A DNA stretch of 64,000 nucleotides. It comes from Euprymna scolopes (Eukaryota). The first letter of the stretch is position 1; every line of letters begins with the position of its first letter. Positions 3,622-11,106 of the stretch are shown here, in pieces. Below the pieces are notes generated by a model. That model did not search any database, was not told where the DNA came from, and saw only the letters and a list, made by a program, of their open reading frames with translations. The position numbers were made by a program, and so were the translations under genes. The DNA is taken from NCBI GenBank assembly GCA_053919585.1, contig CM132813.1; one strand, given 5' to 3'.

Positions 3622-4906
3622 TTAGAGGGGGAGTTGGAGAGGGATTTTTCTGCCTGAAGTTCTGGGTTTGTAAATAACTCCTGCACGCGGATATCCCCTC
3701 CTCAGTGGAATATTCGAGTAGAGAGAGGAAACATTAATCGTGAGGTGTATTTTTTGGTAAGTTACGATGTCGTGTAAGATCTGTAGGAAGTGTGTCTTGT
3801 CTTCAATATAACTTGGTATGTTTGGCAGCAATGGGTTTAGGATATTGTCAATGTATCTCAAGGTCTTCTCTGTGAGGGTCCCGATGACCGAAACGATAGC
3901 TCTGTCAGGTGGATGGATCTGGAGAGCCTTAGTATATGTCTGTGAGTTCGGTAATCGAAGCCTCGGTGTTTCCTGTGTATTCAAATGGGAGGTATACGAG
4001 TATAATGCTGACTATATACGGGAGTTTATGACGTTTGGGGAGAGTGTAAAATACAGCCAGGTTGTGGTGTGCTGGTACTAATTTCTCAACCGTTCTCTAA
4101 TGGGTTGATCTAGACTGCTGAGTATAGTGTTGAGTTCGGATTTAACTGTGCTGTTGGGATCACTGGCCAGTGGATTGCAGAATTATCTGTTCGCTAGCTA
4201 TGTGTTTATTTCTGTTATGTAATCATGTGTGTTCATGATGCCGATTGAGCCTCCTTTGTTTGCTGCTTTTATGGTGATGAGATTATTATTCTGTAATGAT
4301 TCTATGGCATGTTGTGCGTCCTTTGTTATAGTATGATGGGGTTTTCTGTGCAGTTTAGCTATGATGAACTGATCTAAATGTTTTTTATTGTGTTGTTTTA
4401 GGCGTCTATGTTTAGATTAGGTCCATAAAAAGGTGTTCAATGTTTAGTTTTTTAATCATTTGCACGTTTATTTGTGGAGGAATGATGGCTACTTGTTGGT
4501 TGTTATTATGGAGGGATTCCTTTAATTTAAGTCTTCTGATAAAGTATCCCATGTCATAGCACAAGTTTTATTTGTGGGCAGAATGAGAGTTCTTTAGCTA
4601 ATAGCGTAATTTCGTTTTCTGAAAGTCGGTGGTCCGATAAGTTTGCAATATAGGTGTACTGTGATTTTTAGGGGATGCATTGCGTGTTATTATTTTTTAG
4701 AAGTCTACTGATGGCGTATGGTTTTGTTGGTTTAGATATGATTGAACACTTCAATTTTGTTGATTAATGTGCTAGGTCTCCGTTGTTTTAACTGTAAAAA
4801 TTGAAAGAGATGTTTATAGGAGATTGTGTTTTCGTAAATGTTGTATAGGTAAGAGAATACTGGACACGGTGTCTGTTTCTGTCACATGTGTTCGAGAGTG
4901 TTCTTG
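3622..4906 (-). mobile_element. Penelope-like element remnant (N-terminal region plus first RT motifs), pseudogenised
   Basis: Minus-strand motifs NLSDHRLSENEITLLAKELSFCP, FIRRLKLKE, IKAANKGGSIGIMN (DKG motif), RAIVSVIGTLTE, PSYIEDKTHFL and NVSSLYSNIP, with stops and frameshifts. Confidence 0.85.
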
Positions 4907-5455
4907 TGTTAAAGAGCATCTCTCCCCCCCTCTCTGGCTTTCTTACTCTTTCTATTTTCTCTCTGTGTGTCTCTATTAGAGAATAGAGAAAGGGAGAGGG
5001 AGAGAGAGAGAGAGAGAGAGGTGAATAACGTGGACAGTGGACACGTTTGCAAAAGAAGGGTCAGCTGACCAGATGACGTGGTATCATGTGATGAGGTTAG
5101 CTGATTCTTTCTTGGCAGTTGGGTTTTCGGGTGTTGAATAAGACAGACGGCTTTTCAGCTGTCCCCCCCCTGGGCTGGGGAGGACGCTGACGTGTATCAT
5201 CAAACAAGCAAGGTTCACCTCCATTCTGTGTCGACCTTTGGAAGGTGAATAAAAACATAAAAACCTTAATTGTCATCTTGGAGTGAATTCTTCATCCAAC
5301 AGGCCAGCTCCCCTCCAAGAGACAATGAAAACCAGAGGAACAACAGACGACACCTGAATAAAGGTATGTTAAAAAAATACATGTCCACAAACACACACCC
5401 ACGACACGAATCTCCTTGACAAAATCTCCTTTATGACACCCCCGAATATATAACA
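4907..5455 (+). repeat. 5' LTR (549 bp)
   Basis: TG...CA ends; AATAAA at ~5248; by eye identical to the 3' LTR except for two extra AG units. Confidence 0.95.
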
Positions 5456-5464
5456 TATTCGTTT

Positions 5465-5478
5465 TGGTGCTCGTGACT
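5465..5478 (+). promoter_or_regulatory. Primer-binding site, tRNA-His-like
   Basis: TGGTGC(T)CGTGACT lies 9 nt after the 5' LTR and matches the complement of the tRNA-His 3' end (TGGTGCCGTGAC) with a 1-nt insertion. Confidence 0.6.
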
Positions 5479-5553
5479 AAGTCGCATCACCGATGCGATA
5501 ATCGAACCTGTGTTTAAGAAAATACAACGTGGAAGCATGGAGATTTAGTGTCA

Positions 5554-5691
5554 NNNNNNNNNNNNNNNNNNNNNNNNNNNNNNNNNNNNNNNNNNNNNNN
5601 NNNNNNNNNNNNNNNNNNNNNNNNNNNNNNNNNNNNNNNNNNNNNNNNNNNNNNNNNNNNNNNNNNNNNNNNNNNNNNNNNNNNNNNNNNN
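5554..5691. other. Assembly gap (N run); others at 9076-9220, 18011-18183, 37662-37837, 38534-38675 and 45870-46020
   Basis: Runs of n. Confidence 0.99.
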
Positions 5692-8020
5692 GGGTCCATT
5701 AAAACACTAGGCGAATTAGAAAAATAATTAAGAAAAAAAAAAAGAAAAAAAAGAAAAGCAATACACACGTACAACCTTTTCACGAAGAAAGAAAAGGAAG
5801 ACATACAGACACACAGATGTAAAACTTTATATATAGAAAATAGTTAAAAAAAATATTTATCGTATTGGGAATTAACTCGTTATGAACGAAGAAAAATATC
5901 ACTTAATGTCAAAATTAGAAGGGAAAACGAAAAATGACCTTATTTTGTAAATTTTTAACAACGGCCAGTGAGAAAACCAAAAAGAAACGAGCCTTACCAC
6001 AAAGATAAACATGTCAATCAAAAATATGTGTTATGAATATTTCGTGTCATTTTTAAATTGTGAACTAAATGTAACTTTTAATGAAAAACGATATGTACTT
6101 TTGATGAAAAACAATGGATAGGTTCTGAAATGTGATTTTTTTTTTCCTTTTTTTCACTAATTGAACGATTTTATTTCTTAGGAATTTTTTTTTTTTCTTA
6201 CATGGACAATTTTAGTTCCATCGAGTTGTCTGAGACTTTATAAGTGAGTCGTTTTATTTTATTTTAGAAACGACTGTATTTTAATTGTAAATGTCTAGGT
6301 ATTTTTTTGTAAACGACTGTGGTTTTTCTTTAATTTTGAATTCTGTGGAATGGTAAAAGATGATGCACTATGCAGCCGACCTACTTGCTGACGTGGACAA
6401 AATTTTGTTGTTTGGATTTTTGTTATTGCTAAGATGGGACTTTGTGATTGCTTATAGGATTTTTTGTATTTTTTTAATTTATTATTTTTATGTAATTGAT
6501 GTGTTGTCAAACGGTATTGGCAGAATTTTCTTGTTCTTTGACATGTATTTTTTTTCGCAGAATGGTGAGGTGAAATCTTTGCTTGTGGGGTCTATTGAAA
6601 GAATGATTAATAAAAGAAAGAACGTGCTGTTAATTAATAATCATAACAGTAATAATAAAATAGGGAAAAAGAGAAAGAAATAAGATTTAAACAGTGTAAT
6701 AAATGATTTAAAAAAAAAAAAAAAAAAAGTTTCGGAAGAGTCAAAGGTTCAGTCGGTATTAATTTCAATTTTTCTCGGGAAATGATTCGAATTTTATTTT
6801 TTTTTTATCGTGATTTCTGTTGATTTCGAGTAGAATCAACATGGAGCAAGTTTGAGTACTTCATGTGTGGAAATCCGATGTTTTCCGTGAAGCTATGTGT
6901 CTTCAAGGCAGGTTGCGCTTACCGACTTTGGAAAAAAAAAAAGAAAGTTTTTTCTGACATAGCAGTGAACGGAATGTATTCTGTCCAGCGTGAGCGGATC
7001 TAGTTGTAATCAACTTCAGGGAGCAAATGAAATGCCCTCTGACATGGTGTAAGGGGCAGAGGGGGTGCAATGGCTGACGTGGCCATTATGTTACGAATCG
7101 CTCAAGAGAAGATGAATGAAATATGTATGCAAGTACTTAGGAAAATAAAATGTTACCATATTGTGAATTAAAGGTACCAAAATTAAAAAAAAAACCATGC
7201 TGGGTGAATTTAATTGGTATTATTAAATTAAATTATTTTGGAATAGATTTGGTTGGTTTAGTTATATTTTAGGGACGTTTAGCGCGTAGTTGCATTTTTT
7301 TTCATGAGAATTACAAGGCGATTAGGCTGTAGAAAGCAGTTTTTTCTGTTGTTTTATTTTTTTTTTATAAGCCACGGTATTGTCACAAATTAGAAAATTT
7401 GGCAGGGGAAATACTATTTTAGAGTAATGAGAACCCTGTTAAAACAATACTAGTGGTTCCAGTGAGTTGGAAGATGCCACGTAGGCCCAAGCAACGGCAA
7501 TAAGTCTTGTCCAACAAAAGTCTGGCGTGCGAGGTCGCGATAATTCCTCAGGGTACGGAGCGACTGGACAGTCGGTACCAAGCCTAATCACGGGGAGATA
7601 GAAGAAAAGGAAAGATGCAGATTACGTAAGGGACAAGATAGAGCCTTATTATTTTTTATTTTTTTAGAGGAATGTGTGAGGGATATCTGGGTTGGAATCT
7701 TGGGACTTGCTGGGAATGCGGAAAAATCACAAAGGGAAAACTACTTAGTTAGAAATCGATGGCGCATTAGTTAGGGAGTGATGATTCCGTATCTTGTCGG
7801 GTTCCAGGAACTCAAACAGGCTCCGAGTGAATCAGTGTGAAGGCGTATCTTGACTTAGACCAACCAAGGGAGTTAGTAGAAGAGCTTTGTGAAGTCCCGA
7901 AGTAGTAGATTGAATAGAACAAAGCTCCAGTAATAGGACCACTCAGAGAAAGACGTCAGGGCATTACAGTAAAGGAAAAAAAAACTGGGACTTAGGCCTA
8001 TGCTGAAAGTCGAGAACGCG

Positions 8021-8093
8021 AGTGGGATGGTTGAGTCGGTAGAGCATCAGACTTTTAATCTGAGGGTCTGGGGTTCGAGTCCCCATGCGATAA
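8021..8093 (+). pseudogene. tRNA-Lys(UUU)-derived sequence (pseudo-tRNA or SINE head) inside the LTR element
   Basis: AGTCGGTAGAGCATCAGACTTTTAATCTGAGGGTC matches the metazoan tRNA-Lys(UUU) core; anticodon arm TCAGA/TCTGA and T arm TGGGG/CCCCA pair; B box GGTTCGAGTCC; the acceptor stem does not pair. Confidence 0.85.
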
Positions 8094-8492
8094 AGCTACC
8101 ACCAACATGGAGCATCCGACGTTCTGGTCGTAATTGCGATATGCTGGCCCCATTTCGAAAAAGTGATCGAAAATGGAGTCTCCATTTGTTTGGCCAAGTG
8201 GTCCAAATAAAGAGCAGAGTCAGTGGAAAATATCCAACAATGCGACCGCCTAGACAAGATGTATATCTGCAAAGCTGTATCTTTGTCTAACTTGGAAGCA
8301 AGTTAATGTCTAGGAGGGACTTTTGAGAAGCAGCAGAAGGGTTGATAGTGTTGTAGAAGAGTACTGGTGCCTGATCTTTCTTGGAAAAGGGGTGAGTCCG
8401 GAAAGTGAAAAAAATAAAGATGTACTTCGGACATAATTATTTTTTTTAGTTAGTTAGTTATTAAAAATGTATGGCTTGCCATACATTTTGAT

Positions 8493-8510
8493 AAAAAAGG
8501 GGTGGAGGAA
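8493..8510 (+). promoter_or_regulatory. Polypurine tract
   Basis: AAAAAAGGGGTGGAGGAA immediately precedes the 3' LTR. Confidence 0.9.
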
Positions 8511-9055
8511 TGTTAAAGAGCATCTCTCCCCCCCTCTCTGGCTTTCTTACTCTTTCTATTTTCTCTCTGTGTGTCTCTATTAGAGAATAGAGAAAGGGAG
8601 AGGGAGAGAGAGAGAGAGAGGTGAATAACGTGGACAGTGGACACGTTTGCAAAAGAAGGGTCAGCTGACCAGATGACGTGGTATCATGTGATGAGGTTAG
8701 CTGATTCTTTCTTGGCAGTTGGGTTTTCGGGTGTTGAATAAGACAGACGGCTTTTCAGCTGTCCCCCCCCTGGGCTGGGGAGGACGCTGACGTGTATCAT
8801 CAAACAAGCAAGGTTCACCTCCATTCTGTGTCGACCTTTGGAAGGTGAATAAAAACATAAAAACCTTAATTGTCATCTTGGAGTGAATTCTTCATCCAAC
8901 AGGCCAGCTCCCCTCCAAGAGACAATGAAAACCAGAGGAACAACAGACGACACCTGAATAAAGGTATGTTAAAAAAATACATGTCCACAAACACACACCC
9001 ACGACACGAATCTCCTTGACAAAATCTCCTTTATGACACCCCCGAATATATAACA
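8511..9055 (+). repeat. 3' LTR (545 bp)
   Basis: Direct repeat of 4907-5455, followed by TSD CTTG. Confidence 0.95.
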
Positions 9056-9436
9056 CTTGGTTTTGCATGAAATGCNNNNNNNNNNNNNNNNNNNNNNNNN
9101 NNNNNNNNNNNNNNNNNNNNNNNNNNNNNNNNNNNNNNNNNNNNNNNNNNNNNNNNNNNNNNNNNNNNNNNNNNNNNNNNNNNNNNNNNNNNNNNNNNNN
9201 NNNNNNNNNNNNNNNNNNNNNAAACTAACGCGGAACTGCCGAATATTATATAAACAAATGAAAGCAAATTTAGGCATATTTTATTGGTTTGAAAATATAC
9301 GTCCTTTTTATTTTAATTATTATAGCATATAAAAAATAGATTGGTATTATAATCTTCAAAAAGTCCGCAGATTTTCATGTAGTTTCGACCCGTAGAATCA
9401 AAGATATGATCATTTAAATATTCAGTTTAACTACGA

Positions 9437-9471
<35 letters not shown>

Positions 9472-9476
<5 letters not shown>

Positions 9477-11106
9477 CAAGCAAAGTAAAATCCTGCATTT
9501 GTAATTGTTTTCAGAAACTTCAAATTTAAGCTAAATGTAATGTAACTGTTTAAACATCCAATATCTTATTTTGTTTGCCTTTTATTCCCCTATAATTTTA
9601 CCCGCCATTGTTTGACTTTTAATAAAAACTATTCTAGTGTTTACGTATTTTAAAGAAATAACTTTAAATTGAGGAAGCAAAAGAAAGTCCGAAGCAACAA
9701 TTTCGCTTCAAGCCAGCTTACATTATTGCTTCTAAATAAGCTTAAATATCAACCAACAGGCAACAAAGCATCTCTAATCGTAATTATTGATGTTCAATGT
9801 TATGCGACGTAGCAGTTAGCCCACATGCCAAGACTGTCTCTTAGTGATCGTCAGAAGCTCATTAATCTCCACATTTCTTGTTTATCCAATCGAGAAATCG
9901 GCCGCAAATTGAAATGTGATCAGAACACGGTACGAAAAAATGTACAAAAGCACCAACACACCGGCAGTGTTCTTGATGCCTCCAAATCTGGTCATACTAG
10001 AGTTACTTCTAAAAGGGAAGGCAATGCTATCAAGATCCGCAGCCTAAGAAACAGATTTGAAACGGCTCCCCGCATCCAACAACAGTGCAATTTTATTAAA
10101 AAGTGATCTCTTTCTACTGTCAAGATAAATTTAAAGGAATTTCATTTGCGAGGATATGTTGCAAGACGCAAGTCAATGATTTCTGTAAAGAATAGAAAGC
10201 GCCGTCTGGATTCCATCCGATGCAATGAAATCCATGACTCTTCATATTTGTCAAAGGTGTTTATTAGCGACGAAAGCCAGTTCAATAGGCTATACAGTGT
10301 TGGTATGGAGTACGTACGTCGTAGAAAAGACGAAGAATGTAATCGTATTGCTCAGTTTCAAAGCTGCGAGGATGTTCAGTTTTGATGTGGGACATTATTA
10401 GTACCAATAGTCGTCAGGCTTATGTAAGCTTGAAAGGTCGAATAATTCGACCAAGTACATTAATACGTTGACTGAGCATTTTCTACCCTTCTTTGGTCGG
10501 AATTTGGATGATAATCCCATCTTCATGCAGGATAATGCTCTAAGCCACACAGCTGGTAATGTCAAGATGTTCCTTGAAGAGCATGCTATTCTGTGCTTAG
10601 TTGGCTGGCAAAATTTCCAAACCTCAATCCTATCAAAAACGTATGGCATTACATCAAGCAACATGAATTTCAAACTTTGGAAGAGCTTTTGACAAAAATG
10701 AAAGAAACGTTGGATGCCCTTTCCCCGGAGTATTTCTGCAGTTTGATTCAAGGAATTCCATAACAATTGCAGTCTGTAAAATTGCAGAAGGGATATGCTA
10801 CTTTATATGGACTATTTCATTGTGATCTTGTTTTATTTGTGTTGCATTGATACCCTTAAGTTACATTTAAATAACAATTTTCCATTATGCGGACTTTCTT
10901 TTTGTCACCTAAATTTGAAGTTTTTTTTTAAATTACGTGAACACCAGAATATTTCAATTAAAAGTCAAACATGTACAAATAAAATAATAGAAGAATAAAC
11001 GTCCAATCAAATAAGGTATAGTTTGTTTAAACAGTTACATTTAATTTAGCTCAAATTTGCAGTGTTTAAAACATTACAAGTGCGGACTTTCTTTTTACAG
11101 AATGTG
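9472..11106 (+). mobile_element. Full-length decayed Tc1 element with long IR/DR-type TIRs (~220 bp)
   Basis: TIRs ~9472-9695 and ~10885-11106, with the AAAGAAAGTCCG motif repeated at inner and outer ends; flanked by TA; interrupted transposase inside. Confidence 0.9.
9825..10810 (+). pseudogene. Tc1 transposase pseudogene
   Basis: HTH N-terminus MPRLSLSDRQKLINLH..., then ARRK, VFISDESQFN, FMQDNALSH and a degenerate WP.QSPDLNP, with stops and frameshifts. Confidence 0.9.

What the first reader, a model, noticed from the sequence alone, without database searches (positions are those of the whole stretch)
4907..9055. Young, protein-less LTR retroelement carrying an internal tRNA-derived Pol III module
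Seen: near-identical LTRs (differing only in AG-repeat length by eye), a 4-bp TSD, a tRNA-His-like PBS, a PPT, ~3 kb of non-coding interior, and a tRNA-Lys(UUU)-like unit at 8021-8093 in sense orientation ~420 bp before the PPT. Known: plant Cassandra TRIMs carry a 5S rRNA Pol III module, and LARDs are mobilised in trans. Inference: this may be a recently active animal LARD family that propagates a tRNA-like unit. The unit could act as an internal Pol III promoter or insulator, a packaging signal, or a source of tRNA fragments, rather than being a one-off SINE insertion. No TSD or tail marking a recent SINE insertion was obvious around it.
Basis: partly seen in the sequence, partly recalled or inferred. 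Interest (0 to 1): 0.75.

Follow-up and report, generated by a model that had tools for sequence, protein, structure and literature searches.

The report
Non-coding LTR retrotransposon carrying tRNA-Lys fossil
This is one very young copy of a protein-less LTR retrotransposon family, about 600 copies in a 5.9-Gb mollusc genome, and every copy carries a decayed tRNA-Lys-like segment inside a shared 1.4-kb internal block; that is unusual but has no demonstrated function.

Summary
Window 4907-9055 is a complete non-coding LTR element. Its LTRs (549 and 545 nt) differ only by a 4-nt AG indel. It has TG..CA ends, a CTTG target-site duplication, a tRNA-His-like primer site and a polypurine tract. A tRNA-like unit lies at 8027-8086 (Rfam, 43 bits).

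The unit is a family feature, not a one-off SINE. All 44 sampled genomic places with its core lie in the same internal block of LTR elements. The core occurs only about 640 times in 5.9 Gb. Ten of ten siblings have perfect 4-bp duplications and nearly identical LTR pairs.

New here: the 1.37-kb block 7143-8510 is almost identical between lineages whose LTRs are 68-90% alike or unalignable. One lineage (B) gained it by recombination; its relatives (B0) lack it and still transposed.

The unit sits in the interior of a 4-kb element, so the Cassandra/Helenus logic of a Pol III promoter in the LTR does not apply. It is no better conserved than its surroundings.

The scan noted this unit before on other DNA of this genome.

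Most likely it is an inherited passenger.

The parts
4903..4906 (.). left target-site duplication CTTG
   Evidence: the same 4 nt recur at 9056-9059; 10 of 10 siblings also have perfect 4-bp TSDs
4907..5455 (+). 5' LTR (549 nt, TG..CA). The first ~110 nt form a CT/AG-rich hairpin with an (AG)n microsatellite
   Evidence: miRNA-like Rfam hits at 4920-5020 are far below gathering scores
5465..5477 (+). primer-binding site, tRNA-His-like with a one-base bulge
   Evidence: identical in 10 of 11 siblings; the tRNA-His assignment rests on the canonical animal tRNA-His 3' end recalled from memory
5482..5508 (+). looped-out hairpin (5482-5498), then TCGAACC (5502-5508), which is complementary to a tRNA T-loop; the second half of a split tRNA-His complement
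   Evidence: copy L023 keeps the hairpin through changes on both sides; lineages B and B0 have a different hairpin at the same place
5554..5691 (.). assembly gap (138 N) inside the element; not read, not filled
   Evidence: siblings have 126-143 nt between the flanking anchors, in the same order and orientation
5692..7142 (+). AT-rich non-coding 5' interior specific to the A and C lineages. The window copy lacks about 200 nt that siblings have at 6757-6772
7143..8444 (+). shared non-coding 3' block (the 'module') found in all lineages that carry the tRNA-like unit
   Evidence: only 7-9 fixed substitutions between the A, B and C lineages
8021..8093 (+). tRNA-Lys(UUU)-like unit in sense orientation. 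The central part is canonical, the acceptor stem is lost, the B box is intact and the A box is degenerate
   Evidence: Rfam 8027-8086, 43 bits; no ARAGORN call; 55 copies compared
8094..8447 (+). body downstream of the unit. T4 at 8321-8324 (A lineage only). An AT hairpin ends in a T8 run at 8440-8447
   Evidence: (fold z = -3.06, 0 of 100 shuffles as stable)
8445..8510 (+). PPT piece: a 10-bp hairpin at 8466-8487 plus the polypurine tract at 8493-8510. It is 100% conserved in nearly all lineages and duplicated in lineage B
8511..9055 (+). 3' LTR (545 nt)
9056..9059 (.). right target-site duplication CTTG

Best explanation
The element is one very recent insertion of a non-autonomous, LARD-like LTR retrotransposon family.

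How it most likely works (inferred):
- It is transcribed from its LTR and primed by tRNA-His.
- It is copied and integrated, with 4-bp duplications, by the proteins of an autonomous LTR element that was not identified.

The tRNA-Lys-like unit is a fossil of a captured tRNA or SINE head. It lies in a 1.37-kb non-coding block just upstream of the polypurine tract. That block, not the unit alone, is what the lineages share. It has spread between lineages with very different LTRs, by reverse-transcriptase template switching between co-packaged RNAs, anchored on the common 66-nt PPT piece. The unit is therefore inherited with every copy as a passenger.

Shown: the anatomy, the family-wide presence of the unit, the absence of a free SINE, and the mosaic structure.
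Inferred: trans-mobilisation, the recombination mechanism, and the passenger status of the unit.
For: - Anatomy.
- Recent activity: 10 of 10 A-type siblings have perfect, different 4-bp TSDs, and 9 of 10 have LTR pairs with 0-2 substitutions in about 555 nt. Five B copies have 2-7 substitutions in about 710 nt, with TSDs.
- Unit only in this family: the exact 31-nt core occurs at 515 places and at 640 with up to 3 mismatches, with 0 in the reversed control. The body 8094-8448 gives 660 candidates. All 44 sampled places lie in the block and are followed by the PPT piece and an LTR.
- Mosaic structure: the block differs by 7-9 fixed substitutions between lineages, while their LTRs are 68-90% identical or unalignable.
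- Capture by recombination: B equals B0 plus the block, with the PPT piece duplicated on both sides. Two more B0-type 3' ends were found among single LTRs.
- No special constraint on the unit: 0.78% departures in the unit against 0.65% in the part of the block upstream of it, Fisher p = 0.30, in 21 copies chosen without regard to the unit.
- The A lineage, the most numerous, has a T4 run at 8321-8324 that B and C lack. This argues against selection for one fixed Pol III transcript.
Against: - Decay of the tRNA is uneven. The central part, about 52 nt, is canonical, while both acceptor strands and part of the D stem are scrambled. This fits either selection on the centre or a recent partial capture.
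- A 1.37-kb non-coding block is far better conserved than the LTRs. Purifying selection on cis-acting functions could also explain that.
- Block-bearing B outnumbers block-less B0 in the sample: 9 pairs against 2 pairs plus 2 single 3' ends.
- The body folds better than shuffles (z = -3.06).
- No RNA data could be obtained, so transcription of the unit is not excluded.
Confidence: 0.6

Rival explanations
1. The unit is a working internal Pol III promoter or TFIIIC site. It would make a 300-430-nt structured non-coding RNA ending at the T runs, or act as a chromatin boundary that keeps copies expressed.
For: - The B box is intact, and the unit is in sense orientation.
- T7-T9 runs at 8440 are present in all lineages, preceded by a hairpin.
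- The body is structured, z = -3.06.
- Twenty runs from 8 studies, of transcriptome-like size, hold over 90% of the words of 7700-8510. None of them is on record as RNA.
Against: - The A box is degenerate in the family, with G at tRNA position 14 in 54 of 54 siblings.
- The T4 run at 8321-8324 is gained or lost between lineages.
- The unit is no better conserved than its flanks.
- No retroposed free copies of such an RNA were found among 44 places.
- Such an RNA lacks R-U5-PBS, so it cannot drive transposition as in Cassandra or Helenus.
Confidence: 0.2
2. The block is a cis-acting fitness cassette. The tRNA-Lys mimic, or neighbouring structure, would help the parasitic RNA enter particles or be reverse-transcribed, so lineages that capture the block proliferate.
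For: - The block is near-identical across at least five LTR types.
- B carries the block as an acquired insert.
- The 5' breakpoint differs between lineages, 7143 against 7179.
- B outnumbers B0 in the sample.
- The anticodon arm, which Pol III does not need, is canonical.
Against: - B0 copies without the block have LTR pairs only slightly more diverged than B: 0.7-1.7% against 0.3-1.0% substitutions. The block is therefore not required.
- The primer site is tRNA-His-like, not Lys.
- The counts are small.
- Recent recombination alone explains the near-identity.
Confidence: 0.12
3. The unit is a one-off or recent insertion of a free-standing, high-copy tRNA-derived SINE.
For: The shape of the unit (tRNA-like head with a lost acceptor stem, a body, then T runs) resembles a SINE.
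Against: - Only 640 cores occur in 5.9 Gb even with 3 mismatches allowed.
- 44 of 44 sampled places are in LTR-element context.
- All 40 best matches to 8000-8300 start at query base 1, upstream of the unit.
- There is no TSD or tail around the unit.
Confidence: 0.02
4. The perfect LTR identity of this copy is an assembly artefact: reads from many near-identical copies collapsed, with gaps beside both LTRs.
For: - Six N runs lie in the 64-kb window, and two of them are next to this element.
- The family has hundreds of copies at 96-100% identity.
Against: - The copy has private features: G to A at 7608 and at 8034, a deletion of about 200 nt at 6757-6772, and an AG indel between its own LTRs.
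- It has matching TSDs.
- Ten siblings on other contigs show the same youth, each with its own TSD.
Confidence: 0.05

Closest known systems
LARD / non-autonomous LTR retrotransposons (plant LARDs, Kalendar et al. 2004, from memory; TRIMs as reviewed in PMC10886601)
   Same: Two LTRs, PBS, PPT and TSD; a conserved non-coding interior; no gag or pol; many young copies, which implies mobilisation in trans.
   Different: The host is an animal (mollusc). Size is intermediate, 3.6-5 kb with 0.55-0.7 kb LTRs. The interior is a mosaic, with one block shared across lineages that have different LTRs. No autonomous partner was identified.
Helenus / TRIMp3, and Cassandra (Kojima 2024, PMC10886601)
   Same: A non-autonomous LTR element with a tRNA-derived sequence that keeps the box B motif but is unlikely to encode a working tRNA. 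It makes 4-bp TSDs, as animal Helenus does, and tRNA-His is among the primers used. An origin by SINE or tRNA capture is proposed for those families too.
   Different: In Helenus, Ajax and Cassandra the small-RNA sequence lies in the LTRs, and the elements are 311-1263 bp long, so Pol III can transcribe the whole template. Here the unit is internal, about 420 nt before the PPT, in a 4-kb element with many T runs. It cannot serve as the promoter of the transposing RNA.
tRNA-Lys-derived SINEs of cephalopods (Ohshima & Okada 1994, cited in PMC10886601; squid SK family and the strong-stop model, Ohshima et al. 1993, from memory, paper not held)
   Same: A tRNA-Lys-derived head with a decayed acceptor stem, followed by an unrelated body, in a cephalopod-like genome.
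   Different: There are no free-standing copies, no LINE-type tail and no TSD around the unit. The sequence after the unit is not the complement of this element's U5 end, as the strong-stop model would predict.

Membership tests
Non-autonomous LTR retrotransposon (LARD-like) | Two direct LTRs with TG..CA ends, flanked by a target-site duplication | tested here: met
   for the window copy; 10 of 10 A-type siblings and 5 B copies.
Non-autonomous LTR retrotransposon (LARD-like) | PBS next to the 5' LTR and PPT next to the 3' LTR | tested here: met
   The PBS is identical in 10 of 11 siblings (one, L010, differs only at a base just upstream of it), and the PPT piece is 100% conserved. The tRNA-His assignment was not checked against this genome's own tRNA-His gene.
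Non-autonomous LTR retrotransposon (LARD-like) | No coding capacity for gag or pol, yet multiple young copies | tested here: met
   The longest ORF is 107 aa. No Pfam match at E <= 0.01. About 600 copies.
Non-autonomous LTR retrotransposon (LARD-like) | An autonomous partner sharing LTR ends, PBS and PPT | tested here: inconclusive
   No LTR pair more than 4.3 kb apart among the first 100 LTR starts. Seven F-type-env Gypsy loci share nothing with the element.
Helenus / TRIMp3 (PMC10886601) | tRNA-derived sequence located in the LTRs | tested here: not met
   The only Rfam tRNA match is internal, at 8027-8086. There is none in either LTR.
Helenus / TRIMp3 (PMC10886601) | Short enough for Pol III (311-1263 bp) | tested here: not met
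   The element is 4149 bp, and siblings have LTR starts 3.35-4.3 kb apart. T4+ runs are frequent.
tRNA-derived SINE | Free-standing dispersed copies with their own TSDs and a LINE-type or A-rich tail | tested here: not met
   44 of 44 sampled copies lie inside LTR elements. Only 640 cores in 5.9 Gb.
Functional tRNA-Lys gene | Complete cloverleaf with a paired acceptor stem | tested here: not met
   ARAGORN finds none. The Rfam alignment covers model positions 7-64 only.
Retrozyme | Hammerhead ribozyme in the terminal repeats | tested here: not met
   No hammerhead match in 4000-10500 at E <= 1.

The most novel reading that the evidence does not exclude
The 1.37-kb block with its tRNA-Lys mimic is a transferable cis-acting cassette. 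Unrelated non-coding LTR lineages capture it repeatedly by recombination because it raises their success, through tRNA mimicry during packaging or reverse transcription, or through Pol III/TFIIIC recruitment. That would be a way of using a small-RNA module different from the LTR-promoter design of Cassandra and Helenus.
Probability: 0.15. Interest if true: 0.7.

Novelty: new variant of a known kind. Interest (0 to 1): 0.4.

Why it matters
Non-autonomous LTR elements with small-RNA-derived parts have so far been described with the module in the LTR, where it can promote Pol III transcription of a short element (PMC10886601). This family is large, very young and from an animal. Its tRNA-derived piece sits in a shared internal block that moves between LTR lineages.

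If the block has a function, it points to a second way in which parasitic retroelements exploit tRNA-like RNA. If it has none, the family still has uses:
- It is a clean natural record of recombination between co-packaged retroelement RNAs.
- It accounts for about 600 false tRNA-Lys-like hits when this genome is annotated.

Tried and rejected
After that, no letters of 8032-8076 went to any database, pattern, genome, paper or findings search, and searches were placed beside them. Local scripts that aligned already fetched loci did still span that stretch.
- Extra conservation of the unit. None was seen within copies. Between lineages there are too few fixed differences to test.
- Autonomous partner.
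- An apparent sibling with an A-type LTR and a different interior (C1:86165150). It is a 3210-nt segmental duplication holding a truncated LTR, not an element.
- 'B0 is old, B is young'. Rejected: their LTR-pair divergences overlap.
- MALAT1-like design (triple helix plus tRNA-like end). An A9 tract lies about 40 nt upstream of the unit, but no U-rich motifs are nearby and the acceptor stem is missing (by eye).
- Strong-stop origin. The sequence after the unit is not the complement of the LTR end.
- Other small-RNA units in the B-specific interior or in the leader. None found.
- Literature on cephalopod LARDs. Nothing relevant was found, and the 1993 squid SINE paper is not held.
Full report
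**1. What is at 4907-9055**

The coordinates hold a complete LTR element.
- The two LTRs (4907-5455 and 8511-9055) align over their whole length with one difference, a 4-nt (AG)2 indel.
- They begin TG and end CA, and are flanked by CTTG on both sides, at 4903-4906 and 9056-9059.
- Ten nt after the 5' LTR lies TGGTGCTCGTGAC (5465-5477). From memory of the canonical animal tRNA-His 3' end, this is a tRNA-His complement with a one-base bulge.
- It is followed by a hairpin (5482-5498) and TCGAACC (5502-5508), which is complementary to a tRNA T-loop.
- Directly before the 3' LTR lies the polypurine tract (8493-8510), preceded by a perfect 10-bp hairpin (8466-8487).
- The longest ORF is 107 aa, and the interior ORFs scanned have no Pfam match.
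- Rfam finds one tRNA match, 43 bits, at 8027-8086 on the element's sense strand. It is the only gathering-level RNA family match in the 64-kb window.
- ARAGORN calls no tRNA, and the Rfam alignment stops at model positions 7 and 64. The acceptor stem is gone, while the anticodon arm, T arm and box B are canonical.

**2. The gaps**

The N run 5554-5691 lies inside the element, 99 nt after the 5' LTR. I did not read or fill it. Sibling copies are collinear with both sides and have 126-143 nt between the same anchors, so the estimated 138 N is consistent and the two sides are most likely continuous. Nothing is coding there, so reading frame is not an issue. A second gap begins at 9076, 20 nt after the element. 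The window has six such runs.

**3. A large, very young family**

- The genome is 5.9 Gb in 925 contigs. Earlier notes and run labels suggest a cephalopod-like mollusc, which I did not verify.
- The LTR query gives 1,216 candidates, with LTR pairs 3.6-3.9 kb apart.
- The first 19 nt of the LTR occur exactly 1,185 times, against 0 in the reversed control.
- Ten of ten A-type siblings have perfect 4-bp TSDs, all different. Seven pairs have no substitution in about 555 nt, two have 1-2 and one has 7.
- Five copies of a second lineage (B; 712-nt LTR, 4.95 kb) have TSDs and 2-7 substitutions per 710 nt.
- Recent retrotransposition is therefore shown for the family and does not rest on this locus alone.
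- The window copy has private features: G to A at 7608 and at 8034, a deletion of about 200 nt at 6757-6772, and A-run lengths. These argue against a collapsed consensus.

**4. The tRNA-like unit belongs to the family and is not a SINE**

- The body 8094-8448 gives 660 candidates.
- Thirty places chosen by similarity to 8000-8300, and fourteen chosen only by the exact core, all lie in the same internal block followed by the PPT piece and an LTR: 44 of 44.
- All 40 best matches to 8000-8300 begin at the first query base, upstream of the unit.
- A high-copy SINE with this head, even at 10% divergence, would give thousands of matches within three mismatches.

**5. The shared block and its spread**

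- Copies fall into lineages that differ mainly in their LTRs:
  - A1 (the window copy);
  - A2 (LTR about 89% identical);
  - C (LTR 68-85%);
  - further types at 76-90% over the first 170-290 nt;
  - B (only the first 110 nt alignable).
- Yet 7143-8510 differs by only 7-9 fixed substitutions between the A, B and C lineages. The 66-nt PPT piece is 100% identical in nearly all copies.
- Lineage B reads: own interior, PPT piece, about 10 nt, 7143-8444, PPT piece, LTR.
- B0 elements are the same without 7143-8444 and without the second PPT piece. Two pairs and two single 3' ends were found.
- This is the footprint of template switching: one homologous switch in the PPT piece and one non-homologous switch back. 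It implies that these RNAs are packaged together.
- Other lineages join the block at 7179.
- B0 pairs are only slightly more diverged than B pairs (0.7-1.7% against 0.3-1.0%). The block is therefore not needed for mobility.

**6. Does the unit do anything?**

- In 21 copies chosen without regard to the unit, departures from the sibling majority are 0.78% in the unit and 0.65% in the part of the block upstream of it (p = 0.30). This measures decay after insertion and is expected to be neutral.
- Between lineages there are too few differences to test.
- In the family, tRNA position 14 is G, not the universal A (54 of 54 siblings), so box A is poor. Box B is perfect.
- The first T4 after the unit (8321-8324) exists only in the A lineage. 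B and C have C at 8324, and all lineages have T7-T9 at 8440 after an AT hairpin.
- The body folds better than shuffles (z = -3.06), while the 340 nt upstream of the unit do not (z = -1.27).
- A Pol III RNA of 300-430 nt is therefore possible but not indicated.
- Such an RNA could not be the transposition template, because it would lack R, U5 and the PBS.
- The uneven decay (canonical centre, scrambled acceptor) is the one feature that a pure passenger does not predict. It fits selection on the centre, or a fairly recent capture of an internal tRNA segment by a reverse transcriptase. Earlier notes on this genome, which I only partly checked, say that this family's reverse transcriptase copies its tRNA-His primer into the leader.

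**7. What could not be done**

- Twenty runs in eight studies, with contig totals typical of transcriptomes, hold over 90% of the words of 7700-8510. None of them is on record as RNA.
- After, no letters of 8032-8076 were sent to any search tool. Local scripts on already fetched loci still spanned them.

**8. Comparison with known kinds**

- The element meets the definition of a non-autonomous LTR retrotransposon of LARD type.
- The closest described relatives in idea are Helenus, Ajax and Cassandra (TRIMp3; PMC10886601). Their defining features are a small-RNA module in the LTR and a length of 311-1263 bp. Both were tested here and are not met.
- It is not a SINE, not a tRNA gene and not a retrozyme.
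- I rate it a new variant of a known kind. The family, the internal position of the tRNA fossil and the block shared across LTR lineages appear undescribed in the literature I could search. The most likely reading is still an inherited passenger.
- Other first readers of this scan noted the same unit on other DNA of this genome (s1-268967, s1-247409).

Noticed in passing
window 5465-5508: The primer site looks split. A tRNA-His-like 13-mer with a one-base bulge is followed by a looped-out hairpin and then TCGAACC, which is complementary to a tRNA T-loop. Copy L023 keeps the hairpin through changes on both sides. Lineages B and B0 have a different hairpin at the same place and the bulge at another position.
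   Followed up: partly
window 8445-8510: A 66-nt piece (10-bp hairpin plus polypurine tract) is 100% identical in nearly all lineages, even where the adjacent LTR is only 68-85% identical. It is probably the real cis-acting signal shared with the unknown helper.
   Followed up: partly
window 6757-6772: Sibling copies carry about 200 nt more here, bounded by a repeated 16-mer. The window copy seems to have lost it between the repeats (a private deletion or an assembly effect).
   Followed up: no
window 7608 and 8034: There are two private G-to-A changes in the window copy against all siblings compared. The one at 8034 restores the universal A14 of tRNAs, which makes this copy look more tRNA-like than its family.
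   Followed up: yes
L072+L069+L074 (G000:C1:86165150-86169200): A 3210-nt direct duplication (98.8% identical) contains the first 330 nt of an A-type LTR together with flanking DNA. It is a segmental or tandem duplication, not an element.
   Followed up: partly
L108 (G000:C1:69513676-69514016, minus strand): An A-type LTR start is preceded by a different polypurine tract (AAAAAAAGGGATAATAA) and an unrelated, apparently non-coding interior. It may be yet another lineage using this LTR.
   Followed up: no
L086-L092 (for example G000:C3:141699752-141703900): Several families of Gypsy-like elements carry baculovirus-F-type env genes: 742 candidates, many with open frames of 668-685 aa and identical scores, so they are young. 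They have no sequence in common with the element studied.
   Followed up: partly
L065 3844-5725: A fragment of an A-type element lies in reverse orientation directly beside the 5' LTR of a B element. The family inserts near or into its own copies.
   Followed up: no
The gathering-level Rfam scan of the whole window listed no hammerhead.
   Followed up: no
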